Sequence record: NC_029103.1
Length of the DNA stretch: 64,000 bases
Reading direction: 5' to 3' (one strand)
Part shown: in pieces, positions 32,570 through 63,705 of the stretch
How positions within the stretch are numbered: position 1 is the stretch's first letter
Layout of the letters: each line of letters opens with the position of its first letter
Made by a program: the position numbers and the translations under genes
The notes under the pieces: model-generated
Databases searched by the model: none
What the model was told of the DNA's origin: nothing
The model's input: the letters and a program-made list of their open reading frames with translations, nothing else

Positions 32570-32665
32570 AAATCCTCACTTAAAAAAATTCTGAGACGAT
32601 ATATATAAGCCTTTCTTAAACAGCTGTTTGAGGTTTATATACCGGTTTTTAGAGTATAAAATAGT

Positions 32666-38294: not shown

Positions 38295-38440
38295 ATTTGG
38301 TCAATCATATGTATGCCAACGAGAATATTTAAGTTTTCTGCATAACCCGTTAGGAGGAAAAGCGGGTTGAGGTGTGTGGTGAGGAGAGAGGAAATAAGAC
38401 CTCAAACAGTTGTTTGAGAGAAAGAGGGAATAAAAAAGAA

Positions 38441-38893
38441 CTAGCAAACTTCAGCAGTTGATCTAATTTTAATTATATACCTGCCAGAAGACAGTTTTTT
38501 AGAATATATTTCGTAATACACTGTACACCAACCAACGTATTCGTTATGATAATCCCTACCTTCAATTAACAACTTTAGTTCTTGTAATGCCTTATCCTTC
38601 AATGTCTTTGCTTTCTTCTTCTTTTTGTTTTCCCACATTACTTCTAATTCATAACCAAGATCGGGGTCTGGGTCATGTTCAAACGTATAGTGCATGTCAA
38701 GTTCTTCATAACTTTCAGCGATAAAACCACAAAGTTTGCAAAAATACAATTTGTTTTCTTCTTGAATTTTATTTTTCTTCTGAGTAGTGCTACTTCCCAT
38801 GGTTTTCGCCACTATAGTATTCGTTATGGGAATATATAAAATTTCTGCCAAACAAGTTAGGCAGTAAATGTTAGAACAAACGTGGTAAAACAA
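38441..38893 (-). CDS. C2H2 zinc-finger protein (true start probably about 38800)
   Basis: FCKLCGFIAESYEELDMHYTFEH. Confidence 0.65.
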   Translation of the reverse strand: MFYHVCSNIYCLTCLAEILYIPITNTIVAKTMGSSTTQKKNKIQEENKLYFCKLCGFIAESYEELDMHYTFEHDPDPDLGYELEVMWENKKKKKAKTLKDKALQELKLLIEGRDYHNEYVGWCTVYYEIYSKKLSSGRYIIKIRSTAEVC

Positions 38894-39004
38894 ACGACAA
38901 GTCTTATATCTCTCAGGACGCGGAGCAGGTCGAGGGCTGGGTACGGCGAGACAACTCTACAACAGCTGTTTGAGAGGGCAATAAAAATAAAAACGGGCTG
39001 GCTT

Positions 39005-39193
39005 TTAGCTTGTGAGCGAGTACAGTTTGTACAAATACATCTGGATTTTTTGCACAACAAAATATGCTTTCCCTAGCTTCTCCTTATCCAGATTACCTTT
39101 CGTCATAATCTCATTCATAAGCTCTTCCAACTCACTGAAATCGTCTTTTAACATTTCCGTGATTTTTTGTGCCAATATTTCATCCATATTCAT
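39005..39193 (-). CDS. Small helical protein under a CTAAC-type promoter
   Basis: 62-aa ORF; promoter at 39218-39246. Confidence 0.65.
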   Translation of the reverse strand: MNMDEILAQKITEMLKDDFSELEELMNEIMTKGNLDKEKLGKAYFVVQKIQMYLYKLYSLTS

Positions 39194-39338
39194 GGCACTT
39201 AATTACTGGTAAGTCTGGTATTTAAAATTTCTGCTCAACAAGTTAGACAGAATCGACGAGCTGTGTACACTGAAAACAACTCTAAAACAGCTGTTGTTTA
39301 AAATCGGATTAAAAGAGAAGGAGAAGGGAAAAAAAGAA

Positions 39339-39587: not shown

Positions 39588-40316
39588 TTAGGTAGAAAGT
39601 TTACGCAAAATATCCAGGGCGTCTTTCGTTTGTGTGTACTGTATAATTCTTTCTAACTTCCTATGTCCGGTTATCTTCGCGATAAGTGCTGGGTCTGTAG
39701 CATTTTTTGCCAGGAAGGAAATCAGTGCATATCGCAACGAATGTGTGTTGCACTTCAGGTATTTCAGTGCGAACATCCTTATTCTTGCTTCCAGTTTATC
39801 GTCATTGATGGTCAGTACTGATTTGTAAGCTAGTCTGTTCCTGATGACATCGGGGATAATGAAGAACCTCGTGTTGCCGTGCTTTTCTGCTTGCAGTTGA
39901 AACTCTCTTTGCCCCGATTCCGCAAACGTCTTAAATGCCCTAATTGCCTCACCTATCCTAGCACCGTTTAACAGCTGTATGAGCAGAATGGCAACGTACG
40001 CCTCGTAGGGCATCAAGTTCAAATCAAACAGCTGTTTGTACGCAGACGTGAGGACTTTCTTGGCTTCGAGGAAATCTACGCTGTAGTCCCAAGTATGCTC
40101 TATCTTCTTCTTGCCGAGCGGTCTCAGAATTCTCTTGAGTACCTCACTTTCCTCTCTCTTTCCTTTCTTCTTCTCCTCCTTCAGTCCTAGTTTTACAGCT
40201 ATCATATCAACGATATCCTTCCATCCCTTTTCCTTAGCTTCTTTAAGGTACTCCAAAAGCTTAGGGGAGTTGTCGGGAAGGTTTAGAATAATTTGCTTAA
40301 GTTCGTCTTTGTCCAT
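39588..40316 (-). CDS. Tyrosine recombinase/integrase (Xer-like, not the SSV partitioning type)
   Basis: Catalytic residues NGAR, K, HSLR, TGH and QY are all present. Confidence 0.92.
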   Translation of the reverse strand: MDKDELKQIILNLPDNSPKLLEYLKEAKEKGWKDIVDMIAVKLGLKEEKKKGKREESEVLKRILRPLGKKKIEHTWDYSVDFLEAKKVLTSAYKQLFDLNLMPYEAYVAILLIQLLNGARIGEAIRAFKTFAESGQREFQLQAEKHGNTRFFIIPDVIRNRLAYKSVLTINDDKLEARIRMFALKYLKCNTHSLRYALISFLAKNATDPALIAKITGHRKLERIIQYTQTKDALDILRKLST

Positions 40317-40442
40317 TTATTTCACCCTGTTACTATCAAAAATTGAATTTTGTTTTTATCGGGTTGACTTAATTCTCCCTTATCTTCCATTTCGCTTTCC
40401 CTCATATTATCCTCTCAAACAGAAGTTTAAAAACCCCGAGGG

Positions 40443-40468
40443 ATTTCGCTTTGAGCCGAAAGCGAAAT
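40443..40468. other. Candidate tyrosine-recombinase core site (10-6-10 inverted repeat)
   Basis: ATTTCGCTTT-gagccg-AAAGCGAAAT; an extra half-site lies at 40389-40398. Confidence 0.5.
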
Positions 40469-40509
40469 GTTTTTAATACTACCTTCCTATTTTTTACATG
40501 GGGAAATAG

Positions 40510-41196
40510 ATGAAAATATTAAAGAGCGAATTGTTAGGAATTGAAGAAAATGATAATAAGTTAAAAATAACATTCAAAACCACTTCTAGCGAACCATTAG
40601 TATTTAGATTTAAGAATGAGATATTCGGAATTGCGGAAAATGTGGACATTTATGAAATTACTTTTGACGTGTTTCCAGTGATCATGCTTGATTATACTAT
40701 GAAAAATGCATTTACAGAAAGATTCAAAAGAATGACGACTGACAAATACATTATAAATGTAGACACAATCGGTGATTTTAACGACTTCGACGAATTCAAA
40801 AACTTCTTGGTTAGATATCCATCGTATGTACGTTTTTTAGAACTAGTATACCGCATTTTTAACATGAAACCATGGTTATTTCCTCTGTATATTTCAACAT
40901 TTTCGTACAAACATTATATAAATTTAAATCAGCATGAAAATCAGCATGAGCATGAAATAGAAATAACAATAGAAAAGATAAGTATCAGCAATATCTTCAA
41001 GAAGTTTCATGTTAACAATAAAATATCAATGAAATTGCTAGACAAAAATGGTTATTTGTTGTTATCAATCAATAATACACCTTTTATCGATTTAGGTCAT
41101 ACTATAATGTATAATGATCTTATTAAAATATTAGAAGAAAGACCGAAAGCGATAATAAATATATTAATAATGCTAATATTAACTCTTGCAGATTGA
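40510..41196 (+). CDS. Hypothetical AT-rich protein
   Basis: 228-aa ORF with GGGG RBS. Confidence 0.6.
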   Translation: MKILKSELLGIEENDNKLKITFKTTSSEPLVFRFKNEIFGIAENVDIYEITFDVFPVIMLDYTMKNAFTERFKRMTTDKYIINVDTIGDFNDFDEFKNFLVRYPSYVRFLELVYRIFNMKPWLFPLYISTFSYKHYINLNQHENQHEHEIEITIEKISISNIFKKFHVNNKISMKLLDKNGYLLLSINNTPFIDLGHTIMYNDLIKILEERPKAIINILIMLILTLAD

Positions 41197-41474
41197 CGTA
41201 TTTAATTATGAACTCCTCAAAAGTTTTTTCTCCCTGACCTATTTTCTCCCCTTAAACGAGCTGAATATTGTTACAGCTTGGTGGAGCTACATGTCAACTT
41301 CTTAAGGAGCTTTAACAGCTTTTTTAAGAATTTGTATTCCTTCCCGTCATTGCCCATCATACTTCTTATTGTGACGGTCAGTGGGAAAATAGTCATTTTC
41401 TTTTCTAACAGCTGTTCATTTATATGTTAGTTTGTTGATTATTTATTTAGAGTGAATTTGGAAAAGGTGGTAAT

Positions 41475-42125
41475 ATGACCCCACTCAATATAAACCTCAA
41501 TATAAATCCACTCACAGGGGTCGAAATAATAATAACGCTACTTTTAGCAATAGCCACATACGATGTATATACTAAAGTAAAAACAACAAAAACAAAACAT
41601 TTACACGAGATATTAAGTCTTGAAGCAATTGCAATAAAATCAACAATTATAGACATGTCACGGTTTGCTCTATTATGGGTAGCCATGATCTTATCATTAA
41701 TTAGTATAATATGGTCTACTAAGTTATCTATAGTGTTCGTAGCAGACTCGCTACAAAGTCCTTTATCTACTGGCATTGAAATCGCCCTTTTCCTGCTTTT
41801 ATTTGTTAATGTCACATTCATCCGTTATTTCTTTAACAAATACGGAGCCGTCTACAAATTGCCACTCGCATTTTTAGTGAGAAATAATATTAAACAGTTC
41901 CTAGCTAAACGTCCAGAAATGGTTATAACACTAATGGCTTTTCCTATAGCATACGCCATAACAATTATCTACCTTTTGACGCTACTCATAAATGCTCCAT
42001 CACTTTTATCAAAAGAGGTTGTAGGTATAGTCACTGTACTTCTGCTCATTGAGGTTCTACCTAACAAAAAATATGATAACGCTATTAATCTTGTAGAAAA
42101 AATTTGGAGTATAAGAATGAAGTGA
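41475..42125 (+). CDS. Multi-TM membrane protein, paralog family C (copy 1)
   Basis: YFFNKYGAVYKLP and NKKYDN motifs shared with 44944-45639. Confidence 0.7.
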   Translation: MTPLNINLNINPLTGVEIIITLLLAIATYDVYTKVKTTKTKHLHEILSLEAIAIKSTIIDMSRFALLWVAMILSLISIIWSTKLSIVFVADSLQSPLSTGIEIALFLLLFVNVTFIRYFFNKYGAVYKLPLAFLVRNNIKQFLAKRPEMVITLMAFPIAYAITIIYLLTLLINAPSLLSKEVVGIVTVLLLIEVLPNKKYDNAINLVEKIWSIRMK

Positions 42126-42296
42126 AATAATTTTTCTTTACTTTCTTTTTGGTCTCTATTTTCTGTGATACTCATATTATTTCTTTTCCCCTCCCCGTTT
42201 CTTTCTCCTCGGCTTCTTTCGTGTTGTCGATAATTTCAAACAGCTGTTTAAAAGCTTAAATATTCGCCTACCGAATGTTGTTGTAAGGGTCGAAAA

Positions 42297-42713
42297 ATGA
42301 TGGAAGAGTTAATGGAAAAAATTAAAGAATTCCTAGATGGAAAGAACGCAGAATATAATATAGGTCAGCCAGAAGAAACTGTAAATGACACGACATTAGT
42401 AGAAATTAAGTTGGGGAAACCTATAGAGTTAACAGAAAACGAATACGAAAAGTTAAGCGATCTTCTAAGGTTCTTAGGTTTTCGTCCTACTGACATATGG
42501 GAAAACCGGGTAAATGATTCCTTGAATTATAGAAGTTATAAAGGCGTTGACGAGTTCCTAGACAAGAACAACGACCAGGTGCGTATATATTATACTAAAG
42601 TTTCAACAGGTGACGAAACTACATATTTTGTTAATAAGATAGAGTTTGAGACTGAGGAAAATATACAGAAATATTTTAATGAGCTAAAGAAATATGTGAA
42701 CGAACTTTTCTAA
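42297..42713 (+). CDS. Small acidic alpha/beta protein (weak AcrID1-like pattern)
   Basis: Operator and TATA upstream; IELTENEYEKL pattern. Confidence 0.65.
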   Translation: MMEELMEKIKEFLDGKNAEYNIGQPEETVNDTTLVEIKLGKPIELTENEYEKLSDLLRFLGFRPTDIWENRVNDSLNYRSYKGVDEFLDKNNDQVRIYYTKVSTGDETTYFVNKIEFETEENIQKYFNELKKYVNELF

Positions 42714-42842
42714 TCTAAGCTAATTTTTCGTTTCTCTACACTGTCCTTAACCCCACCTGGGTCTGCTTCTTGCAGACTGACAGTACCCTCAAACATCTGT
42801 TTTATTTAAATACTAGCACCTATAATACTTTATTGAGGAAGG

Positions 42843-43535
42843 ATGGTTAAGGCTTGGTTTGACCAGTTAGATTTTGATGTGATAGAAGATATAGAATACA
42901 CTCGCGACGGAAAACCTGTAAAACCCTACGTGTCCTCATTTCATATTGTTACAAAGGTTCGATACGACGGTAAATACAAAGAATTAGATGTTATGGTCTT
43001 TCCGCAAAAGAATAAGATATTGATAGGATATCTGAAGGACGGTGAGTTTGAGGTCGTTGACGCAAAACTCTATGATTCAAGTGTTGGAATGGTGTTTGAT
43101 GACCTGCTTGACACACTTACCCCAATTACTAAAACAGTTCAAGAGAAAATACAGGAGGAAATTCAAGAGCTTAGTAACAATCCTGATAATGACGTATTGC
43201 CTAATATAACGCAGACCTTAAGGGTATACGGGACGATATTTAATGAAAATCCTTACGGTGAATATGTAGGTAATGTCACTATCAAACAGTATGTAGGCAC
43301 CAGCGTTGAGACGGAGCATAAAGTTGCTGAAGAATCGTTTGAGGTGAAAAAATCAAGTGATGGGGAACTAGAAGCAGTAGAATATGATCACGGGAAAGAG
43401 ATATTCAATCCAGTTTACCAGGAGATGTTAGACACCTTAATTCCCTCTAAAAGCGAGTTCGAAGATCTTATTGGACTTATAAAGCAGGCGATAAGGGAGG
43501 GTAAAGCTGAATATGATGATAAGAACCTAATTTAG
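42843..43535 (+). CDS. Acidic protein, paralog family B (copy 1)
   Basis: Shares KPY.S.F, YGTI, KKSSDGEL.AVE and Y..ML...IPSK.EFEDL with the next gene. Confidence 0.75.
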   Translation: MVKAWFDQLDFDVIEDIEYTRDGKPVKPYVSSFHIVTKVRYDGKYKELDVMVFPQKNKILIGYLKDGEFEVVDAKLYDSSVGMVFDDLLDTLTPITKTVQEKIQEEIQELSNNPDNDVLPNITQTLRVYGTIFNENPYGEYVGNVTIKQYVGTSVETEHKVAEESFEVKKSSDGELEAVEYDHGKEIFNPVYQEMLDTLIPSKSEFEDLIGLIKQAIREGKAEYDDKNLI

Positions 43536-43594
43536 CCTCTAAAACAGCTGTTTAAGTTAAATATTAGGACGAATAATATTTTTCCCGAGGGAAT

Positions 43595-44431
43595 ATGACA
43601 AAACACTGGCTGGAGATCTTCGATATAAAACCCTGGTTTGAGGCTTTCGACTTCCATATAAAAGTAAATATTAGGTATACAAACGAGGAAGGGCAGATCA
43701 AGCCATACTTGTCAGCATTTTCCGTTAGCCTTGACGCACTTTATCCTCACTTACAAACTATAACAATCGCGGTTTTTCCACAGAGCGATAAGTTAGAACT
43801 ACTATATGGAAATTCATACAATTACGTCATTGCTAAAGTACCTATCGAATATGCCGGACTGACATCCCATTTTATGCCGGTCGAAGAGACGCTCGACCAT
43901 ATAAATCTACCGGACTATGTGAAGGACTATTTGAAGAGAGTGTTGAAGCTAATACTGGACAAATTCTATGTCCGTGATGATCCGTTGAAGTTTCTTTCCG
44001 CTCTTAACCAGGGTGACACAAATGCTCTTGACGAACTGCATAAACTAATACAGACTATACATATTTATGGAACGATATATGACAAAGGGGACAATCGGAA
44101 AGACATAGGTAAGGTCAGTATTTACGATTATTTCGCTATCAATGGTAAAACAGAATACAACGATATTTACGATTATTTCGACAGCGTCGACTACGATGAA
44201 GCTGAACAATATGTCACTAAAAAATCATTTGTGATACAAAAATCAAGTGATGGGGAACTAACGGCAGTTGAAAAAGTCGGTGACAGAGAACTGTTCAATC
44301 CGACTTACCAGACAATGTTAAGTGTTATAATCCCCTCTAAGACGGAGTTTGAAGACCTTGTTCAATTCGTAAAGGATGTGATAAAGGAGAAAGGCGAAGC
44401 GGAATACGGTGATAAGAATGCAGTTCTCTAA
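43595..44431 (+). CDS. Acidic protein, paralog family B (copy 2)
   Basis: Tandem paralog; nucleotide identity in the 3' half. Confidence 0.75.
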   Translation: MTKHWLEIFDIKPWFEAFDFHIKVNIRYTNEEGQIKPYLSAFSVSLDALYPHLQTITIAVFPQSDKLELLYGNSYNYVIAKVPIEYAGLTSHFMPVEETLDHINLPDYVKDYLKRVLKLILDKFYVRDDPLKFLSALNQGDTNALDELHKLIQTIHIYGTIYDKGDNRKDIGKVSIYDYFAINGKTEYNDIYDYFDSVDYDEAEQYVTKKSFVIQKSSDGELTAVEKVGDRELFNPTYQTMLSVIIPSKTEFEDLVQFVKDVIKEKGEAEYGDKNAVL

Positions 44432-44511
44432 AAACAGATGTTTAAGTTAAAATTGGGTCGTTCACTGCTCCACGTCTTCTATTTAAAAACAAACTGGTAG
44501 AAGGTAATGAT

Positions 44512-44817
44512 ATGGGAATATTAGAAGAAGTCCAAAACGCACTATCCTACTACCAGAGGACTGCCGTCGATGAAAACGACACATTATACCTGCATAACAT
44601 ATATTCCCAACTATACTACATTCTATCAGTAGAGAATAGACCTCTGAATAGTGACGAATTCGACAATCTATTGAAAGCGTTAGGGATAAACGATACCACG
44701 ATGTTAGTCCAAGAGTACCAGAACCTATCCGAAGACCAGAAAAAGCAACTGTTGATGCAAATACTGGGAATGATAGAGAACGTTATGAGAAATATACACA
44801 CTATGACTAACTACTAA
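44512..44817 (+). CDS. Small acidic helical protein
   Basis: 101-aa ORF with GAAGGT RBS. Confidence 0.65.
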   Translation: MGILEEVQNALSYYQRTAVDENDTLYLHNIYSQLYYILSVENRPLNSDEFDNLLKALGINDTTMLVQEYQNLSEDQKKQLLMQILGMIENVMRNIHTMTNY

Positions 44818-44943
44818 TTCTCTCGAAACTCATTCTTTTAAAGCCAATATTATTTTTCATTATTTTTCATCTCTCATGTTAACTCTTGTTTCAGATCATG
44901 CGGGAAGTCGTAGTTTTTAAACAAACTAGGACAAGATGATAGT

Positions 44944-45639
44944 ATGAATCCGTTTAGTGTGAACCCACCTACAATTGAAATGACACTATTCCCATTAGGC
45001 AGTTTACTAGTTGTAGTCATAACTACGTTATTAATGTATATTCTATACATTACAATAAAAAAATGTGAATCTAAAATAACATGTCGTGAGAAATTAAGTC
45101 CTGGAATGATTGAGTTAAAATCGGTGATTGCTGTCATGCCACGCTTCTTTTTATTTTTTGTAGTAATGACTTCACCATTATCTATCTTAACTATGTCTAC
45201 TATGATGTCTATAGCATTCGTCATAGGTTCGCTACTAGGCAAGATACGGAGTACTCTACCTGCTGATGTTGAAATTCTGGTCTCTTTTCTGTTTTTTGTT
45301 GTTAATATTATACTTGTGCATTATTTCTTTAGCAAATACGGTTCTGCATATAAATTACCATTTGTAGTTTTCAGAAGAAATGACATCAAACAGTATTTTA
45401 AAAGGCACAAAGACCTTCGTATTAAACTCCTTTTTATATATATGGTATTAGCATCGGGTTCTGTAACATATGGCATAACAATTTTCAACCTTTTAACGAA
45501 TCTCGCAACTTCACGTTCAATTATATCAACAATTGATACAAGCATAGTTATTACACTACTACTCGTTTATGTCATATTTAACAAAAAATATGAGAATGTT
45601 TTCAAGCTTGCGAAAAAAATATTTGGAATAAAGGAGTGA
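44944..45639 (+). CDS. Multi-TM membrane protein, paralog family C (copy 2)
   Basis: YFFSKYGSAYKLP and NKKYEN motifs. Confidence 0.7.
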   Translation: MNPFSVNPPTIEMTLFPLGSLLVVVITTLLMYILYITIKKCESKITCREKLSPGMIELKSVIAVMPRFFLFFVVMTSPLSILTMSTMMSIAFVIGSLLGKIRSTLPADVEILVSFLFFVVNIILVHYFFSKYGSAYKLPFVVFRRNDIKQYFKRHKDLRIKLLFIYMVLASGSVTYGITIFNLLTNLATSRSIISTIDTSIVITLLLVYVIFNKKYENVFKLAKKIFGIKE

Positions 45640-45670
45640 ACTTCTTTAAATTGGAAGGAGGTCTAAGCCT

Positions 45671-46430
45671 ATGAGAGTTGAACTTGTATCATATACAAAA
45701 GACGGAGAAAAGATAATTGCGATAGCCTCAAAGATGAGTAGGTCTAGGAAGGGTTGGGACTATCACTGGCAAAATATGACCGATGAAGAAATAGAGGAAT
45801 GGATAAGGGATGCAATAGTTCACGGATATTGGTCTGTGCTTGAACACAGTGTATACACTTTCTCGCTTGAAGGTATTTCAAGAGTAGCGTCACACCAATT
45901 GGTCAGGCACCGTATCGCTTCGTATACTCAAATGAGTCATCGCTTTGCAAAAACCAGTCGATGAATATTATCAGCCTGTTATACCGCCTTCTACTAAGAA
46001 TCGGGCTAGGCAAACTGTAGAGGAAGCGTATAGAGAAGCATATAACCACTATTATAAACTCCTAGAAGCTGGTGTACCTGAAGAAGATGCCCGTTACGTT
46101 TTACCGAACGGTGTCAACACGAACATTGTTGTGACCATGAACGCACGAGAACTTTACAACTTCTTTGCCCTGCGTTTGTGTTCAAGGACACAGTGGGAGA
46201 TACGTCAGGTGGCGTGGAAGATGCTCGAAGAAGTGAAGAAAGTACATCCTAGACTATTCCGTTATGCTGGGGCTAACTGTATTATCCACGAGAACTTTAT
46301 ACGTGACACGCCGATAACCCTAGACGAACTTAACGAGAAGACGGAGTTTATATCGATGCGTTGTATAGAAGGAGTCCCGAAAGAAGGGATTTATAAATGT
46401 ATACAAAACGCAAGAACTCGTTCTAGTTAA
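45671..46430 (+). CDS. thyX: Flavin-dependent thymidylate synthase (split by an extra A at about 45950)
   Basis: HWSVLEH and [11 protein letters not shown] (RHRx7S) motifs, LPNG...[12 protein letters not shown], and RLC.RTQWEIR. Confidence 0.93.
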
Positions 46431-49051: not shown

Positions 49052-49241
49052 GTTATTCCCTAGTCTATATGTTTTTAGTTGATATTTTAAGCTTTCTGTC
49101 AAACGAGTTAGGATGATACTGAGGGTAAGAAAGAGAAGTGGAAATAGACATTAGAAGAAGGAGAGAGAAATGGATTAGGTTAGGGGCTAAAAATAGAAAG
49201 GATAAAATAAAAAATAACGTAACTTGGTACCGTTATAACCG

Positions 49242-49418
49242 TTATAACCTTATTTTCTCTACTTTAGCAACAGGAACGTTCTCTTTTTCTAATTCTCTCC
49301 TTACAAAATCCTTGATTGCTACTCTGATAGCTTCTGACCTATACATGTTATTTCTTATTGCATATCTGTCTAATAGTTCCAATAGGTCTTCTTCTACCTT
49401 AAATGTTACGACTCTCAT
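49242..49418 (-). CDS. Ribbon-helix-helix (CopG-type) regulator, 58 aa, missing from the ORF track
   Basis: Translated by hand: [58 protein letters not shown]; GGGG RBS. Confidence 0.88.
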
Positions 49419-49547
49419 TTTTCCCCGGTTTAAGTATTACTCTTGGTTGGTATTTAAGCTTTCTGGCTAACGAGTTAGGACGAAAGGGCGAGACGGTTAG
49501 AATGACTCTGTATAACAGCTGTTTCATAAAAAATGGGGGTTCAAAGC

Positions 49548-49584
49548 AGGTGGAAAGCCTCGTCCCTTAGTGCTGGGTAGCTCA
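49548..49584 (+). mobile_element. Solo IS605 right-end remnant
   Basis: GGAAAGCCTCGTCCCTTAGTGCTGGGTAGCTCA resembles 63225-63262 and 60613-60654. Confidence 0.6.
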
Positions 49585-49589
49585 ATTGG

Positions 49590-49841
49590 TTAAGAGGACA
49601 AAAGTTCACGCTCTAACTTGTCTAATTTGTCCCTCGCAGTATCAATAATATATCCTACTTGGTTTTCCATCGAATCTATGAGGTCTTCCACCACATTATC
49701 TTCTACTTTGTAATGTTTACCGTTAATTTTTACGTTTTTCCCTTCAATACGAATAAAGTAATCATGTGACTTTACCCCTGATTGCAAAACCAATTTTATT
49801 ACGTCAGATAGAATCTGTCTTGAATATTTATTGAAATCCAT
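49590..49841 (-). CDS. Small hypothetical protein
   Basis: 83-aa ORF. Confidence 0.55.
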   Translation of the reverse strand: MDFNKYSRQILSDVIKLVLQSGVKSHDYFIRIEGKNVKINGKHYKVEDNVVEDLIDSMENQVGYIIDTARDKLDKLERELLSS

Positions 49842-49903
49842 CTTAATTTTGAAAACTTCTTCAGGTTCACCGTCACTTTTTCTTTTTTTAATAGTGAGCG
49901 ATT

Positions 49904-50485
49904 TTAGAAGAGAATAAAAACACTATAAATGTATTCTGGAGAATCTGCCTCATAGAAATGTAACTTAGGGGTTCTATGCCTGTATGCATAATCTATGAAA
50001 ACTTTATCAAAATCTAACGTAAAATGATGGGATGAGAAATCTTTTTTGATATAGGAGAGTATTGTATGTACAAGTTTGCCTATTAAATTTGACATTTTAT
50101 TTTTGTCTGCTTCCATCTCTTCCCCGTTAACGTTTAGTACAAAGATATCTTCAACAAATTTTTTCATAACGTATTTTAACTCCACTGAATTACCAAACTC
50201 GCTTAAAATCTTCCCAATCTGCTTTGAAAGATTAGAGTTATCGGTATTCTTATTAACCAGTTCAAAGTTTCCCGAAAAGCGGTCTTCTATGCTTACCTTA
50301 TAACCAGTCTGGTTTATAGTGAATGTAACGCTACCTCCAAGGTAATTTAACCTAAGGGTTAATATCTCTCCTGGAACTTTGTTGTAGCGGATATAAGATC
50401 CAAGCACATTGTTACTTAACAAATGCTCATTTTCCGTCAGTTCCTGTTCCTTCTTTTCCTTTTCGCCCCAGAACTCCTGAGACAT
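49904..50485 (-). CDS. Hypothetical protein (start MSQEFW at 50485)
   Basis: GGAGGG RBS; operator and TATA at 50509. Confidence 0.65.
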   Translation of the reverse strand: MSQEFWGEKEKKEQELTENEHLLSNNVLGSYIRYNKVPGEILTLRLNYLGGSVTFTINQTGYKVSIEDRFSGNFELVNKNTDNSNLSKQIGKILSEFGNSVELKYVMKKFVEDIFVLNVNGEEMEADKNKMSNLIGKLVHTILSYIKKDFSSHHFTLDFDKVFIDYAYRHRTPKLHFYEADSPEYIYSVFILF

Positions 50486-50682
50486 TCTGCCCTCCATTTT
50501 ATACTCTCAAACAGCTGTTTAAAAATGTTCTGCCATGAACCGCAGGGTAGCACGAATGATTTCCTCACTGATTGAAAACCTTAGGTATCAAGGAGCTGAG
50601 AAAAAGAGTGTAAAGCAAAGGAAAGAACGGAGCGAATAATATAAAAATAAGAAATGTATAATATAGGGGGAGGGGAAAAGAG

Positions 50683-51366
50683 GTGGGTCGTTCAATCAAT
50701 ATATCTTCTTCGGAGGTTAATAAACCTTTTGCTCAAATAATTTATGATGTAAAGGGAGAAATTATAAGGACTTTTGGAATTTTGAGGAAAAAATTACTCG
50801 GAGTAAAGGACGTAATCGACCTTATAAACATACCGGCGTGGATAAAATCGCGTCTAAAGGACGAGAACGGTAGTGTAGAAGTATTAGAAGAAGGATACGG
50901 GAATAGAATACTCATAATTAAACTGGAGGATCCAGTGACCGATGACTGGACTAAGAAACAGAGAAAAACGGCTTTCGTTATCTATTTCTCATTTCAAACT
51001 TCAAAGCCCGTCGTACCTGCTCAACTACCATGGAAACTCAATCAGATCTACAAAATTGTCAATAAACTGCGAGCCAAAGGTTATCATGTTTTCCCTGGAA
51101 TCGTTGCTTTTTCATTCACTCAAGGAGCCAAAGAAATACTAAAGAAACATAAAGTAGAAGCATTTACAACGCTGGACTCGGTAAAACAATGGATATATAA
51201 CAAGATAATTTTCAGATTACAAAAATTAGTTGAAATAGCAAAATTCACATTTAAATTTGACAAGATATTTGTCTTTCTCAGGTCGATCATTCAGGAGCTG
51301 GGCTATGATATCCCAGACCAGCTCCTTGAAGTTTGGGCATTAAAGCCCAAGTTCCCGGAGCGTTGA
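50683..51366 (+). CDS. Basic hypothetical protein flanking the candidate origin
   Basis: 227-aa ORF. Confidence 0.65.
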   Translation: MGRSINISSSEVNKPFAQIIYDVKGEIIRTFGILRKKLLGVKDVIDLINIPAWIKSRLKDENGSVEVLEEGYGNRILIIKLEDPVTDDWTKKQRKTAFVIYFSFQTSKPVVPAQLPWKLNQIYKIVNKLRAKGYHVFPGIVAFSFTQGAKEILKKHKVEAFTTLDSVKQWIYNKIIFRLQKLVEIAKFTFKFDKIFVFLRSIIQELGYDIPDQLLEVWALKPKFPER

Positions 51367-51988
51367 AAAAGGCAGAGGGTCTGTCATCTAATTCTATCAA
51401 CTATTTTTCTCAGTCTTGTAATAAATATTCAGAGGACATTAAACTTCAAAATTAATTTCAAAATAATTCTTCTACCTTTTATAAAATTCTTTACAATTCA
51501 ATCTTGTAAAGTTGTGACTTATTACAAAATTTTCACATAGAACTACACTATTTTCATTTTATTTCTTTATATTAACAGAAACTCTGGAAAGACGTGAACA
51601 GAAATAAATTACAATTATTAAGGGAATGAACAGATATTTTTCCTAAAATAACGTGTTTTATAAAGAGAAATTTTTAGGATAAGGGCAAAAATTAACGACG
51701 TGAACAGAACCAGGGTGACTGTTGCACGTATATAGTATACTGTAAAAGTAACTATATCTAATAATCTAATCTAATATAAGGAACTACTAGGACGAGCTAC
51801 TGCAAAGTACGTAGTTTTTAGTAAAGGCAGTACACACTACAGCACACCACTGTACGCTACAGCACTCCAACCTGGCTTTAACACACCCTTACTTTTTGTT
51901 TATTATATTAAGGGGTTAATTTCGCCGAGTTGTTACTTTTTCACTAAGTCTCTTAGTCTAGTGATAAAAATTAGGATAAAGTTATAAA
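51367..51988. other. Long AT-rich non-coding region, candidate replication origin
   Basis: No ORF of 60 aa or more; GACGTGAACAGAA at 51591 and 51697 plus related AACAGA(A) copies; CTACAGCAC twice near 51840-51865. Confidence 0.4.
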
Positions 51989-52282
51989 TTGAGTTTTGCA
52001 TATATTCAAATTATGAAAAACATTTCGGGAAACAAGTATAATAATACTATTGCTCCTATGACAGAGGAAGAGTACGTAAAAGCGAGGGAATTCTATAAGT
52101 TTCTAGTAAGTATAACCAAGTGCAACAATGGGATCTTGACAATCGACAGGGAGAAGCTGATCGATATTGCATCTGCTTATATGGACTGTACTCCCATTGA
52201 GGCATACAACATACTGCTGAAGATGAAATCTTACGGCTGGGTAATTGCTTTAGATAAAGACTACATTGCAGTTAAGGTCTGA
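51989..52282 (+). CDS. Winged-helix-like DNA-binding protein
   Basis: REKLIDIASAYMDCTPIEAYNILLKMKSYGWV fits a wHTH followed by a wing. Confidence 0.6.
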   Translation: MSFAYIQIMKNISGNKYNNTIAPMTEEEYVKAREFYKFLVSITKCNNGILTIDREKLIDIASAYMDCTPIEAYNILLKMKSYGWVIALDKDYIAVKV

Positions 52283-52649
52283 CTTTCTTTTCGCGAGTGT
52301 TCTCCGCTCGGTTCTGTCTCAGCGGGCTGAGGTTGTCTGGCTATCCCTAAAACAGCTGTTTGTGGATTCATTTTCATGATCATCCCAGCTCACTCGCCAA
52401 ACTTGTATCGCCCTTTTTTGAATCATTAACTTTTTATCTGAATTTAACTTAGATTTAAACTGACCCATATATCACACCTCTTTTTTCTGATTTGTGACGA
52501 AGACGGAAAAACGGATTATGACGAGAGGAGTCCCAACATCCTCCTCTCCTTTTCCATATTTTCTTAATATTCGAGCTTCCCGTCGCGGTTCTGTCCAACT
52601 CGTTAGAGATTTAAATAACAGCATGGAGGAGTAGAAACTGGGGTTTAAG

Positions 52650-53240
52650 ATGATATTAGCAATAGGCTATAACCCAATAATCGAGAAACTTCAAGACATC
52701 ACTGGTTACATAATATACCCAAGGTTCTTCGACGACAAGAAGACATTACTCATAGACAGGAATTATAAGAGATACCTTAAGGAGCTTTGGTTTAACAAGA
52801 ACAGGATAGAAGTAGCGTTGTACCCTGACAATATTGACTACCTCCTTCCAGTCCCAAAGGACATAACTTACGTCGTTCCTATTCATACCCTGAGTCAGTT
52901 AGAAATTGCCGACAAGCTTACGGAAAATAACTATAAGGTGATAACTGGGTACGCCTCAGACCAGAAGTACAGGGACTATACCATTGACGACTTCATCAAG
53001 GCGTCTAAATACAAGAATTGGTACCTGGGCATTTCCACCAAACATGAGCTGAAAGAAGCCATGCTCTATTCATTCGATTACGGAGACATCACGTTAATGT
53101 TGCTCGGTAGATTCCAGCAGTTAAAGGACATTAACTACGTGAGGAGGAAGCTGAAAGAACTGTCACAACTGGTAAGCAGGCATGGAAAACAACTTACTCT
53201 GTTCGATTTTTCACAAAGCAACGGCACCTCGAACCTCTAG
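52650..53240 (+). CDS. Hypothetical protein, possible degenerate TGT-like barrel with C-terminal PIP-like motif
   Basis: LYPD, VVPIH, WYLG and DYGD motifs; QLTLFDF at the C-terminus. Confidence 0.6.
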   Translation: MILAIGYNPIIEKLQDITGYIIYPRFFDDKKTLLIDRNYKRYLKELWFNKNRIEVALYPDNIDYLLPVPKDITYVVPIHTLSQLEIADKLTENNYKVITGYASDQKYRDYTIDDFIKASKYKNWYLGISTKHELKEAMLYSFDYGDITLMLLGRFQQLKDINYVRRKLKELSQLVSRHGKQLTLFDFSQSNGTSNL

Positions 53241-53377
53241 CGGGTTTTTTATCATACTCTCTCCTAAACAGCTGTTTTAGAGTTTCTGCTCACCTGCTCG
53301 CCCGTCGCAGTTCTGCTAACCTGTTAGGCAGAAAATTTATATACCAGACTGCAAAGAGTATAAGTGGGGATAAAAAA

Positions 53378-53836
53378 ATGTCAACCCCACAAACACAAAC
53401 CCAACCTCAAACCCAAGCACAAATTCCAAGATACGAGAACTGTCTTCTTGTCACGAGGCATAAGCTCTTAGAACAACAGGAAGAAGACCTAATGAAAATT
53501 TGTAATAAGGTGTCAAGAGTGGAAATGCTCCCTGTAGATCTCAATGAACTAAAGAGAACGGTGGATTTCTATGATGCAGTGATTGGAATAGTTCCTTTAC
53601 CGCTCCAAGTACAAATATTACAAATGAAGAAACCGGTTTTGCTTTTCGAAATGATAGCAATAGGTACAGCAAAAACACATGAGGAAGCGGAAGAGATGTT
53701 AGCAAAGACAGGGAAGCAAGGGATAATCCTTCCCCCAGTACGTAGCGGAGAACCGTTCCGGGTATCAGTATATAAGGGAGTGATCTTGGTGAAAGAAATA
53801 AAAGTTGTTGATGAACCAATCATACAACACTGGTAA
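53378..53836 (+). CDS. Csx16/Crn4-like protein (candidate viral cyclic-oligoadenylate ring nuclease)
   Basis: LLVTRH ... DAVIGIVPLPLQVQI parallels Csx16 (FVTRH ... DTVIGTLPVHLAAEV). Confidence 0.5.
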   Translation: MSTPQTQTQPQTQAQIPRYENCLLVTRHKLLEQQEEDLMKICNKVSRVEMLPVDLNELKRTVDFYDAVIGIVPLPLQVQILQMKKPVLLFEMIAIGTAKTHEEAEEMLAKTGKQGIILPPVRSGEPFRVSVYKGVILVKEIKVVDEPIIQHW

Positions 53837-53845
53837 GTGATCAAG

Positions 53846-53989
53846 ATGAACTGCCTAGAATACTTGAGCGAAAAATATAACCTAAGGGGCTATAGTCCCG
53901 ATACATATCTAATTTTGATAGAAGCAACAAATTTGTCACCAGATGAGTGCGAAAGCTTATTTGCCTATGCAGAAGCCACATACGGTTAA
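53846..53989 (+). CDS. 47-aa protein missing from the ORF track
   Basis: MNCLEYLSEKYNLRGYSPDTYLILIEATNLSPDECESLFAYAEATYG, starting 9 bp after the previous stop, followed by a T-tract. Confidence 0.55.
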   Translation: MNCLEYLSEKYNLRGYSPDTYLILIEATNLSPDECESLFAYAEATYG

Positions 53990-54145
53990 AAGCCAGCCCG
54001 TTTTTTTATGCTCTGCTCTCTCAAACAGCTGTTTGAGAATTTTAGCTTGCCTGCCCGCTCCTGCCCGCTCGGATGTTTCTTCATAACCTGTTAGGCAGAA
54101 AATTTATATATCAAACCGACGAAGTATAAATGTGGTGGTAATATA

Positions 54146-54499
54146 ATGAGATGTTTTAAGGTTCAGGAGGTAATTTGCGTAGATGAAGAAGAAAAGATCA
54201 TGATAAACCTTACAAGGAGAAAATATAAAATTTTAAAGGACGAGGAATACTTCAAATTAATAGAGGAGTTAGAGAAGTACGGTAAAGAGTTAGAAGTTTT
54301 CGTCATAGCAGATCATCGGTACTTTCCAAGGACTTATTATGCTATTTATAGTATCAAGGTCGGTACANCNATATACTANTATTTTNTGGANNTTTANGAC
54401 GGTAGNAGTGCANNNTATTCNTATNNTTTNTGNAAGNNAAGNAANGAATGNGAGAGTANCATTAATGACTTAGAAGAAGANAACATAGCGATGNNNTAA
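54146..54499 (+). CDS. Acidic protein, paralog family D (copy 1)
   Basis: YFPRTYYAIY motif; CTAAC-type promoter. Confidence 0.65.
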   Translation: MRCFKVQEVICVDEEEKIMINLTRRKYKILKDEEYFKLIEELEKYGKELEVFVIADHRYFPRTYYAIYSIKVGTXIYXYFXXXXDGXSAXYXYXXXKXXXEXESXINDLEEXNIAMX

Positions 54500-63378: not shown

Positions 63379-63705
63379 ATGGGGAAAAAGATCGTCTCAT
63401 TTAGACTAGAACGAAGTGCAGTTGAAGCTATTGAGTTTAAGACTAAGAATAAATCTACGTTCATGAGAGACGCTATAAACTACCTCCTCCAGGAAGGTAT
63501 AACAAAGGATGATATCCTAAAAATAGCCTCATCAATCCCGGTAGACGAGAAGAAACAGGTAAGTGTAAAAATTGATGAAGAGACGTTAGGCAAACTAAAA
63601 CGGATTGCGGAAGAAAACGGTATACAGGTAAGTGAGCTAGTAAGAATATCAATATGGAAACTCCTCATGAAAGAAGGGCTTGTTAGCTCCATACAACCCC
63701 AATAA
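63379..63705 (+). CDS. Tandem double ribbon-helix-helix DNA-binding protein
   Basis: IVSFRL...NKSTFMRDAI and QVSVKI...QVSELVRISI. Confidence 0.8.
   Translation: MGKKIVSFRLERSAVEAIEFKTKNKSTFMRDAINYLLQEGITKDDILKIASSIPVDEKKQVSVKIDEETLGKLKRIAEENGIQVSELVRISIWKLLMKEGLVSSIQPQ

What the first reader, a model, noticed from the sequence alone, without database searches (positions are those of the whole stretch)
42230..44820. Operator-bounded cassette array: each gene is a self-contained [operator-TATA-RBS-ORF] unit
Seen: four consecutive genes, each preceded by operator 1 (42238, 42791, 43542, 44432). The last two operators lie within about 10 bp of the previous stop codon in near-identical context (CTCTAAAACAGCTGTTTAAGTTAAA versus CTCTAAAAACAGATGTTTAAGTTAAA). 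Two of the genes are tandem paralogs, and the recombinase gene is about 2 kb away. Inference: the operator may double as a crossover point for adding, duplicating or shuffling accessory cassettes (integron-like, or like phage promoter-repeat shuffling).
Basis: inference. Interest (0 to 1): 0.6.

Follow-up and report, generated by a model that had tools for sequence, protein, structure and literature searches.

The report
Promoter palindrome bounding swappable virus genes
In the archaeal virus SMV3, four neighbouring accessory genes each start with a copy of a short palindrome that marks promoters all over the genome, and related viruses have often gained, lost or swapped such genes exactly at that palindrome, much as T4-like phages shuffle genes at repeated promoter cassettes.

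Summary
The window is Sulfolobus monocaudavirus SMV3 (record position minus 323). gp53, gp54, gp55 and gp56 are each preceded by AAACA-NN-TGTTT at 42238, 42791, 43542 and 44432. gp54 and gp55 are paralogs, and the integrase lies 1.9 kb away.

The palindrome is not special to this array. SMV3 has 31 strict copies (0.4 expected), 26 of them intergenic and on the promoter side of genes. SMV1 and SMV4 have 28 each; SMV2 and ATSV have almost none, although both carry the integrase. Its first role is therefore most likely the docking site of an unidentified regulator.

The cassette idea is partly supported. Metagenomic relatives hold the same gene families in many different orders, nearly always with the palindrome at the joints. 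Two fairly recent events are exact motif-to-motif changes (L020/L021 versus L026; L015 versus L036), and six more have one end at the motif. Other recent events end elsewhere: the SMV4 1.6-kb tandem duplication, gene relics in SMV1 and L054, and an ORF-only deletion. Assembled contigs showed no excision joints at the motif.

The best reading is homology-driven, PeSL-like shuffling, not an integron. The scan had already noted this palindrome on other DNA (s1-165013).

The parts
42238..42249 (.). Palindrome copy 1 (AAACAGCTGTTT), followed by TTAAATAT at 42256-42263; promoter of gp53.
42297..42713 (+). gp53 (138 aa, PHROG 24726, function unknown). Homologs in SMV2 (gp43, there placed after the gp56 homolog), in ATSV and in metagenome loci.
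42757..42790 (+). Upstream half of the junction module: GGTCTGCTTCTT with a possible hairpin GTCTGC-TTCTT-GCAGAC, then ...CTC. It is shared by junctions in front of different gene families in relatives.
42791..42802 (.). Palindrome copy 2 (AAACATCTGTTT), followed by TTTAAATA at 42805-42812; promoter of gp54. A 99.6% identical strain has the perfect AAACAGCTGTTT here.
42843..43535 (+). gp54 (230 aa, PHROG 28172), paralog of gp55.
43542..43553 (.). Palindrome copy 3 (AAACAGCTGTTT), 6 nt after the gp54 stop codon, followed by TTAAATAT at 43557-43564; promoter of gp55.
43595..44431 (+). gp55 (278 aa, PHROG 28172). It has 15 metagenomic relatives. The model is confident, with only a weak likeness to MHC-I-type platforms.
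44432..44443 (.). Palindrome copy 4 (AAACAGATGTTT), directly after the gp55 stop codon. The TTAAAAT at 44447-44453 belongs to a 10-nt stretch absent from SMV1 and SMV4.
44480..44489 (+). Conserved TATA-like box (TATTTAAAAA) of gp56, kept in SMV1, SMV2 and both SMV4 homologs.
44512..44817 (+). gp56 (101 aa, PHROG 17954), conserved at 81% identity in SMV1, SMV2 and SMV4 (two copies in SMV4).
41475..42125 (+). gp52, paralog of gp57. The two bracket the four-gene array. A degenerate motif (TAACAGCTGTTC) lies at 41406, upstream of gp52.
44944..45639 (+). gp57, paralog of gp52. Its promoter has no motif, and the gene is absent from relatives L058 and L032.
39588..40316 (-). Integrase gp50 (STSV/SMV family tyrosine recombinase). 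The motif copy at 40026 inside the gene cannot be told apart from conserved coding sequence.

Best explanation
gp53 to gp56 are four separate transcription units in the accessory, hyperplastic region of SMV3, between the integrase and thyX. Each starts with a copy of a 12-18 bp palindrome, (CTC)AAACA-NN-TGTTT(GAG), which is shared by about 30 promoters in SMV3, SMV1 and SMV4. Inferred: the palindrome is first of all the binding site of a dimeric regulator that has not been identified. It sits against the BRE/TATA of accessory genes and of divergent gene pairs. It sits over the likely transcription start of structural genes. One factor could therefore set the timing of many genes. Shown by comparison: the same sequence occurs at nearly every joint of this region, together with a T-rich tract and a GGTCTGCTTCTT block upstream and the TATA box downstream. 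Relatives have gained, lost and replaced whole promoter-plus-gene units with the break at the palindrome. Inferred: these exchanges arise by homologous or microhomology-guided recombination between junction copies of co-infecting relatives, as with the PeSL cassettes of T4-like phages. They are not made by the integrase. The motif is a frequent crossover point, not an obligatory one.
For: Genome-wide regulatory element:
- SMV3 has 31 strict copies against 0.42 expected; SMV1 and SMV4 have 28 each.
- 26 of the 31 are intergenic, although only 14% of the genome is.
- The motif occupies 8 of 10 divergent, 25 of 56 tandem and 1 of 8 convergent intergenic regions.
- There are fixed positional classes: 5-16 nt before the ATG of structural and other genes, and 40-68 nt before the ATG abutting the TATA box.
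- Between homologous arms (cassette-region loci), motif positions are 96% identical while flanking positions are 60-70% identical.

Cassette behaviour:
- The families gp51, gp52/57, gp53, gp54/55 and gp56 occur in many orders in SMV1, SMV2, SMV4 and about 30 metagenome loci, with the motif at the joints.
- The gp54/55-type promoter arm is joined to 10 different upstream arms, and the gp53-type arm to 6.
- Among 112 non-collinear pairs with a homologous downstream arm, upstream homology stops within 12 nt of the motif centre in 107.
- 25.5% of intergenic HSP ends lie within 15 nt of a motif centre, against a 10.5% background.
- Clean event 1: L020/L021 versus L026 have flanks 90-96% identical and a replaced block of 2.3 kb versus 1.3 kb bounded by motif copies on both sides. 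L021 and L026 come from the same sample.
- Clean event 2: L036 carries a 582-nt gp53-like cassette between two motif copies where L015 has a single copy. The flanks are 94-96% identical and the two alignments overlap by 15 nt at the motif.
- Six further events have one end at the motif.
- Cassette starts measured against SMV3 fall at 42231-42236, 42788 and 43538-43542.

The PeSL precedent is described in PMC2839356 and PMC4122927.
Against: - The enrichment of breakpoints over the intergenic background is only about 2-fold. Part of it is expected anyway: the motif is a conserved island at the outer edge of each promoter, intergenic spacers are short, and non-functional relics decay with time.
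- 5' boundaries are tight at the motif, but 3' boundaries often are not. This fits 'the promoter travels with its gene' as well as it fits crossover in the motif.
- Several recent events do not use the motif. The SMV4 1632-bp tandem duplication ends inside genes. SMV1 keeps a 41-nt relic of the gp55 3' end. L054 keeps a 36-nt relic of the gp55 5' end. L013 versus L014 differ by an ORF-only deletion. The gp52 and gp57 indels are not flanked by motifs.
- No joints between motif copies were found in three viral metagenomes that hold a 99.6% identical strain. Only assembled contigs were available, so this is a weak test.
- No binding protein is known and no expression data were available.
- Metagenome contigs could in principle be chimeric at short repeats, although most arrangements recur in independent assemblies.
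Confidence: 0.6

Rival explanations
1. Regulation only. The palindrome is just a transcription-factor site (or a boundary or roadblock element) at the outer edge of each promoter. Rearrangements arise by illegitimate recombination anywhere. Selection for intact promoter-plus-gene units, genome compaction and decay of relics make old breakpoints appear to sit at the motif.
For: The motif is genome-wide and also marks core structural-gene promoters that are not shuffled. Recent events end away from motifs. 5' boundaries are tight while 3' boundaries are loose. The excess over the intergenic background is only about 2-fold.
Against: Two events between 90-96% identical flanks have both ends exactly at motif copies, and one of them shows a 15-nt overlap at the motif. 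In L020 versus L026, about 110 nt of spacer upstream of the motif stayed with the upstream gene, and the switch is at the motif itself. Intermediate, relic-type boundaries are rare: 5 of 112.
Confidence: 0.3
2. Integron-like site-specific recombination. The nearby tyrosine recombinase (gp50), or another viral protein, cuts and rejoins at the palindrome to insert or excise cassettes.
For: The recombinase gene lies 1.9 kb away at the edge of the variable region in all SMVs. Its family (STSV/SMV) has no characterised att site. The two motif-to-motif events would also fit a site-specific mechanism.
Against: SMV2 (integrase 76% identical) and ATSV keep the integrase but have only 2-3 motif copies, none at cassette joints. 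The centre of the palindrome differs among neighbouring copies (GC, TC, GC, GA), whereas tyrosine recombinases need matching overlap regions. The inverted 5-mers are separated by 2 nt, not the 6-8 nt of known core sites (general knowledge; the 7-bp overlap is cited). Every cassette has its own promoter, unlike integron cassettes. No circle or excision joints were seen at motifs.
Confidence: 0.05
3. The palindrome half next to the TATA box is a virus-specific BRE read by the divergent TFB-like factor gp61. This would be a sigma-factor-like redirection of the host RNA polymerase to viral promoters; the element would be palindromic because it serves divergent promoters.
For: In class-B and divergent promoters the motif abuts the TATA box on one or both sides, for example TATA-8 nt-palindrome-5 nt-TATA at 32618. 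A TFB-like gene exists (scan note s1-165432, not tested here), and its own promoter carries the motif.
Against: In about a dozen promoters the motif lies downstream of the TATA box, 5-16 nt before the ATG, which cannot be a BRE position. Other copies lie about 55 nt upstream of the ADG-type promoters. SMV2 has a gp61 homolog (39% identity) but not the motif.
Confidence: 0.05

Closest known systems
PeSL (promoter-early stem-loop) regulatory cassettes of T4-like phages (Arbiol et al. 2010, PMC2839356; Comeau et al. 2014, PMC4122927)
   Same: Both are short composite regulatory repeats at the borders of non-essential ORFs in hyperplastic regions. In both, insertions, deletions and replacements between related genomes are flanked by the repeats, and each ORF is a self-contained expression unit.
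   Different: This is an archaeal virus with TATA/BRE-type promoters. The conserved core is a 12-18 bp perfect palindrome that also sits at structural-gene promoters all over the genome. A stem-loop terminator is not consistently present. Mini-circles have not been shown. Many rearrangements do not use the repeat.
Virus-specific regulatory sequences of archaeal anti-defence genes (Bhoobalan-Chitty et al. 2024, PMC11065993)
   Same: Both are conserved palindrome-plus-strong-promoter modules shared by many single genes of one archaeal virus. SMV2, SMV3 and SMV4 were analysed in that paper, and inverted repeats overlapping the BRE were proposed to be repressor sites.
   Different: The published SMV3 set seen in the supplement (six of its eight SMV3 rows: gp46, 47, 48, 62, 69, 71) carries a different palindrome (CTGCC-TAAC..GTTA-GGCAG). 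The protein accessions of gp53-56 are absent from it. The AAACA-NN-TGTTT element and its link to gene-order breakpoints are not described there.
Dual-position archaeal operators such as the Thermococcales glycolytic motif bound by Tgr/TrmBL1 (recalled from memory, not checked here)
   Same: One palindrome is placed either upstream of BRE/TATA or downstream of TATA in different promoters, so that one factor can act in opposite ways on two sets of genes.
   Different: The binding protein here is unknown. This is a viral regulon, and no expression or binding data exist.
Integron attC/attI cassette arrays
   Same: Both are arrays of single-gene units separated by a repeated palindromic element, with a tyrosine recombinase gene nearby.
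   Different: The cassettes here have their own promoters. The site is 12-18 bp, not a 57-141 bp folded attC. The recombinase belongs to another family, and its presence does not track the motif.

Membership tests
PeSL-like mobile regulatory cassettes | Repeated composite element holding a promoter, placed between non-essential ORFs of a hyperplastic region | tested here: met
   A motif plus a TATA-like box precedes gp53, gp54 and gp55, and the same families carry it in relatives. The region between the integrase and thyX varies in all relatives. Promoter activity is inferred from sequence only.
PeSL-like mobile regulatory cassettes | Stem-loop terminator as part of the element | tested here: inconclusive
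   T-rich tracts and a GGTCTGCTTCTT block precede many copies. A hairpin GTCTGC-TTCTT-GCAGAC is present at 42761-42777 and, with changed letters, in L015, but it is absent from many junctions. The bacterial-type terminator scan reported no hairpin at the four junctions.
PeSL-like mobile regulatory cassettes | Indels and replacements between close relatives are flanked by the element | tested here: met
   Both ends lie at the motif in L020/L021 versus L026 and in L015 versus L036. One end lies there in six more events. About ten other events have no end at a motif, so the link is frequent but not exclusive.
PeSL-like mobile regulatory cassettes | Circular products of recombination between neighbouring elements | tested here: inconclusive
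   Only Logan contigs were available. They showed no joints at motif copies. One rare go-back joint (44974 to 41522) lies in the paralogs gp57 and gp52, not at a motif.
Integron | Promoterless cassettes expressed from a common Pc promoter, each ending in an attC site (imperfect palindrome of 57-141 bp) | tested here: not met
   Each gene has its own TATA-like box. The repeat is a 12-18 bp perfect palindrome.
Integron | The recombinase and its sites occur together | tested here: not met
   The integrase is conserved in SMV2 (76% identity) and annotated in ATSV. SMV2 has 3 motif copies in 50 kb and ATSV has 2 in 39 kb.
Transcription-factor regulon (operator) | Over-represented motif at fixed positions relative to core promoters | tested here: met
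   31 copies against 0.42 expected. 26 of 31 are intergenic. Occupancy is divergent > tandem >> convergent. The copies fall into positional classes.
Transcription-factor regulon (operator) | Motif conserved more than its flanks in orthologous promoters | tested here: met
   Motif positions are 96% identical between homologous arms (cassette-region loci), and neighbouring positions are 60-70% identical. Orthologous copies are present in SMV1 and SMV4.
Transcription-factor regulon (operator) | An identified protein binds the motif and changes transcription | not testable with these tools
   Candidates such as the tandem-RHH protein gp86 occur in all four SMVs. The aCcr1 box is a different sequence. 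The HTH_45 protein of some relatives is absent from SMV1, SMV3 and SMV4.
Published ADG (anti-defence gene) regulatory motif of SMV3 | Gene preceded by the virus-specific ADG consensus and listed as ADG | tested here: not met
   The accessions of gp53-56 are absent from the supplement of PMC11065993 (six of the eight SMV3 rows read). Their promoters lack the CTGCC..GGCAG palindrome seen at gp46, 47, 48, 62, 63, 68, 69 and 71.

The most novel reading that the evidence does not exclude
The palindrome is a dedicated, protein-guided exchange site. A viral factor (the STSV/SMV-family integrase or the palindrome-binding protein) would catalyse insertion and excision of promoter-plus-gene cassettes at it. 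That would make this the first integron-like or cassette-capture system known in an archaeal virus, with the regulatory site doubling as the recombination site.
Probability: 0.07. Interest if true: 0.85.

Novelty: new variant of a known kind. Interest (0 to 1): 0.58.

Why it matters
Archaeal viruses carry many fast-changing accessory genes, including anti-defence genes, and how these are gained and exchanged is poorly understood. Suppose a regulator's binding site, repeated at every promoter, also serves as the seam at which whole expression units are swapped between co-infecting viruses. That would explain both the mosaic gene orders of the large spindle viruses and how a new gene arrives already wired into the viral expression programme. 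It would extend the PeSL principle from T4-like phages to archaeal viruses. It would also give a practical handle: the motif could be used to delimit accessory cassettes in metagenomes and to insert genes into SMV-type viruses. Separately, a palindrome at about 30 promoters in two positional classes is a directly testable candidate for the temporal switch of bicaudavirus gene expression, which has not been described.

Tried and rejected
- No relatives of gp55 turned up in IMG/VR by protein, and none turned up with the junction pattern.
- Among isolates, tblastn in the phage collection finds gp54/55 only in SMV3.
- Pfam and PHROGs give no function for gp51-57.
- The gp55 model has no Foldseek match in the PDB. 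The wide search gave only a middling likeness to MHC-I-type platforms (Z 7.2), which I do not treat as homology.
- The literature search for the motif sequence found nothing relevant. Other searches found no description of it in bicaudaviruses. PMC94828, the pING plasmid paper with a reported recombination motif, is not held, so that precedent could not be checked.
- Finding the binding protein by presence or absence failed. gp86 (tandem RHH) is in all four SMVs. gp63 is the aCcr1 homolog, whose box is different. gp73 corresponds to the SMV1 gp44 antitoxin homolog. The HTH_45 protein next to the motif in L010-L015 has a homolog only in SMV2.
- The idea that the motif copy inside the integrase gene is an att core was dropped. 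It lies in generally conserved coding sequence and is not kept in SMV2.
- A terminator-only reading was rejected because the motif is nearly absent from convergent intergenic regions.
- GGTCTGCTTCTT is not enriched genome-wide.
- The read-level test for circles was limited to assembled contigs. The absence of joints there is weak evidence.
Full report
**Identity of the window**

The stretch 42100-45000 is 100% identical to Sulfolobus monocaudavirus SMV3 (KP282677.1 / NC_029103.1, 64,323 bp, circular, Bicaudaviridae). Window position equals record position minus 323. The record annotates four hypothetical genes here:
- gp53, 42297-42713
- gp54, 42843-43535
- gp55, 43595-44431
- gp56, 44512-44817

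The integrase gp50 lies at 39588-40316 on the minus strand.

**The observation**

All four motif copies are present at the stated places, 40-68 nt before the four start codons. For gp53, gp54 and gp55 a TTAAATAT or TTTAAATA box follows 2-6 nt after the motif, and a GAGG-like stretch precedes the ATG. Copies 3 and 4 lie 6 and 0 nt after the stop codons of gp54 and gp55, in nearly the same context (95% over 21 nt). gp54 and gp55 are paralogs (32% identity, E 2e-36).

One detail needs correcting. For gp56, the TATA-like box that is conserved in SMV1, SMV2 and both SMV4 homologs is TATTTAAAAA at 44480-44489. The TTAAAAT beside the motif is part of a 10-nt stretch that SMV1 and SMV4 lack.

**The motif is genome-wide**

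AAACANNTGTTT occurs 31 times in SMV3, against 0.42 expected. SMV1 and SMV4 have 28 copies each, SMV2 has 2-3, and 39 kb of ATSV has 2. The longer consensus is CTC-AAACA-NN-TGTTT-GAG, and the centre can be GC, TA or GA/TC.

Placement in SMV3:
- 26 of the 31 copies are intergenic, although only 14% of the genome is intergenic.
- The motif is found in 8 of 10 divergent, 25 of 56 tandem and 1 of 8 convergent intergenic regions. It therefore belongs to the promoter side of genes, not to their 3' ends.

There are three positional classes:
- Class A lies 5-16 nt before the ATG and downstream of a TATA box. It includes both major head protein genes, the virion protein gp9, the TFB-like gp61 and others.
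- Class B abuts the TATA box and lies 40-68 nt before the ATG. It includes gp53-56, gp80, gp83 and the divergent pairs gp30/31, gp35/36, gp42/43 and gp74/75.
- Class C lies about 100 nt upstream of genes that carry a second, different palindrome (CTGCC..GGCAG plus TATA).

That second palindrome precedes the SMV3 genes that Bhoobalan-Chitty et al. 2024 list as anti-defence genes, so it is taken here to be their regulatory sequence. The rows of their supplement read here (six of the eight SMV3 entries) name gp46, 47, 48, 62, 69 and 71, and the accessions of gp53-56 are absent from it.

Between homologous arms (cassette-region loci) the motif positions are 96% identical and the neighbouring positions 60-70%. 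I found no paper describing this palindrome in these viruses. The scan itself had already noted it on other DNA (s1-165013).

The most likely primary role is therefore the binding site of a dimeric regulator. In class A it would overlap the transcription start, and in class B the BRE. This is inferred. No binding or expression data were available, and I could not name the protein.

**Are these cassettes?**

The region between the integrase and thyX (gp58/59) differs in every relative. gp55 has 15 metagenomic relatives. I fetched their contexts as L010-L026, and 31 further loci from a scan with the junction pattern.

The same few families (gp51, gp52/57, gp53, gp54/55, gp56) appear in many orders, nearly always with the motif at the joints:

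| Source | Gene order |
|---|---|
| SMV3 | 51, 52, 53, 54, 55, 56, 57, 58 |
| L017 | 52/57, 54, 55, 56, 57, 58 |
| L025 | 53, 55, 56, 57 |
| L058 | 54, 56, 58 |
| L054 | 54, (55 relic), 53, 56 |
| L032 | 51, x, 55, 56, 53, 58 |
| L016 | 51, 99 aa, 53, 55, 52/57, 54, 145 aa |
| SMV2 | 56 followed by 53 |

Junctions in front of different families share a wider module: a T-rich tract, CCCC.GGGTCTGCTTCTT, about 15 nt, CTC-palindrome, then the TATA box. So the genes do behave as self-contained promoter-plus-ORF units that are reshuffled.

**Do breakpoints coincide with the motif?**

Several tests were made.
- Of the unique intergenic HSP ends among twelve non-redundant loci, 25.5% lie within 15 nt of a motif centre, against a 10.5% background. 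Comparing the closer relatives L058, L060 and L051 with SMV3 gives a similar, modest excess.
- For class-B sites with a homologous downstream arm, upstream homology is either collinear (26 pairs) or stops within 12 nt of the motif centre (107 pairs). Only 5 pairs are intermediate. The gp54/55-type promoter arm is joined to 10 different upstream arms, and the gp53-type arm to 6.
- Cassette starts measured against SMV3 cluster at 42231-42236, 42788 and 43538-43542, with exceptions at 42192 and 42761.
- I listed the replaced or inserted blocks that lie between flanks at least 84% identical. Two of them have both ends at motif copies.
  - L020/L021 versus L026: the flanks are 90-96% identical, the replaced blocks are 2.3 kb and 1.3 kb, and the switch is at the motif on both sides. 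L021 and L026 come from the same sample.
  - L015 versus L036: a 582-nt gp53-like cassette sits between two motif copies in L036, where L015 has one copy. The two flanking alignments overlap by 15 nt at the motif.
- Six more events in that list have one end at the motif.

**Evidence on the other side**

- The motif is a conserved island at the outer edge of each promoter, and spacers are short. Selection for intact units, followed by decay of relics, would by itself place old boundaries there.
- 3' boundaries are often not at a motif.
- Several recent events do not use the motif:
  - SMV4 has a perfect 1632-bp tandem duplication whose ends lie inside genes.
  - SMV1 keeps a 41-nt relic of the gp55 3' end in front of the motif.
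  - L054 keeps a 36-nt relic of the gp55 5' end.
  - L013 and L014 (98% identical flanks) differ by deletion of an ORF alone.
  - The gp52 and gp57 indels are not flanked by motifs.
- Three viral metagenomes hold an SMV3 strain that is 99.6% identical and collinear over 40438-45811, with no joints at motif copies. Only assembled contigs could be laid, so rare forms would be missed.
- The one rare go-back joint (44974 to 41522, depth 2.7 against 885) lies in the paralogs gp57 and gp52.
- In that strain, 7 of about 22 differences fall within 100 nt around the gp53/gp54 junction, and several of the new letters match alleles seen in metagenomic relatives. This suggests a small recombination patch there.

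**Integron-like reading**

This reading is not supported.
- The cassettes have their own promoters.
- The site is a short perfect palindrome whose centre differs between neighbouring copies.
- The integrase belongs to the uncharacterised STSV/SMV family.
- The integrase is conserved in SMV2 and ATSV, which almost lack the motif.
- The motif copy inside the integrase gene cannot be told apart from conserved coding sequence.

**Verdict**

The palindrome is first a genome-wide promoter element. Its copies, with their flanks, are also frequent but not obligatory seams for gain, loss and replacement of accessory promoter-plus-gene units, most likely by recombination on short shared sequence.

The closest known system is the PeSL cassette of T4-like phages. 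The case differs in its archaeal promoter architecture, its palindromic core shared with core-gene promoters, the uncertain terminator part, and the lack of shown mini-circles.

The functions of gp53-56 remain unknown.

Noticed in passing
window 41475-42125 and 44944-45639; joint 44974 to 41522: gp52 and gp57 are paralogs that bracket the four-gene array. Two viral-metagenome runs hold a rare contig (depth 2.7 against 885) that joins 44974 back to 41522 with GGAC between. That is the signature of a circle or tandem duplication of the whole array between the paralogs, or else a relative's arrangement.
   Followed up: partly
window 40417-40468: A variant motif, AAACAGAAGTTT, is followed by a 10-bp-stem hairpin ATTTCGCTTTGAGCCGAAAGCGAAAT between the integrase and gp51. 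The arrangement is kept in SMV4 and in loci L012, L015 and L016, with some changed letters in the stem.
   Followed up: partly
L008 (SMV4) 40404-43673: A perfect 1632-bp tandem duplication (99-100% identical copies) duplicates the gp56 homolog and truncated copies of its neighbours. Both ends lie inside genes.
   Followed up: yes
L019 3173-3829 and L023 2339-2995: Relatives carry an extra 218-aa gene with a Cmr7A (PF19021) hit between the gp57-like gene and thyX. It may be a viral copy of a CRISPR type III-B subunit serving as an anti-defence cassette.
   Followed up: no
L010/L011 (25-kb contigs), 7571-9186: A gp54/55-like and gp56-like cassette pair with the motif lies directly beside cellular genes (IF-2B, glycosyltransferase, SpoIIM-like). 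This suggests an integrated element or a chromosomal copy of the cassettes.
   Followed up: no
window 42757-42853: In a 99.6% identical SMV3 strain from viral metagenomes, 7 of about 22 differences (including a 6-nt deletion) cluster around the gp53/gp54 junction. One of them turns AAACATCTGTTT into the perfect AAACAGCTGTTT.
   Followed up: partly
window 38295-39300 and 49130-54150: A second palindrome, CTGCC-TAAC..GTTA-GGCAG, fused to a strong TATA box precedes gp46, 47, 48, 62, 63, 68, 69 and 71; I take it to be the published anti-defence regulatory sequence. Most of these units (gp46, 47, 48, 63, 69, 71) also have an AAACAGCTGTTT-type copy roughly 25-95 nt after the preceding gene's stop codon (six of eight, gp68 too, within about 70 nt).
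   Followed up: partly
window 63379-63705: gp86 is a protein with two ribbon-helix-helix repeats (RHH_1, E 4e-8) that is conserved in SMV1-4. It is one candidate DNA-binding regulator, and a motif copy lies 16 nt after its stop codon.
   Followed up: partly
window 43595-44431: The gp55 model is confident (pLDDT 84, pTM 0.85). It shows two similar sheet-plus-helix halves and has no convincing relative among solved structures (best Z 7.2, to MHC-I-like platforms).
   Followed up: yes
whole window: 332 scattered single or double N letters occur in clusters (for example 3076-3285, 9374-9865 and 20262-21374). None lies in 42230-44820.
   Followed up: no
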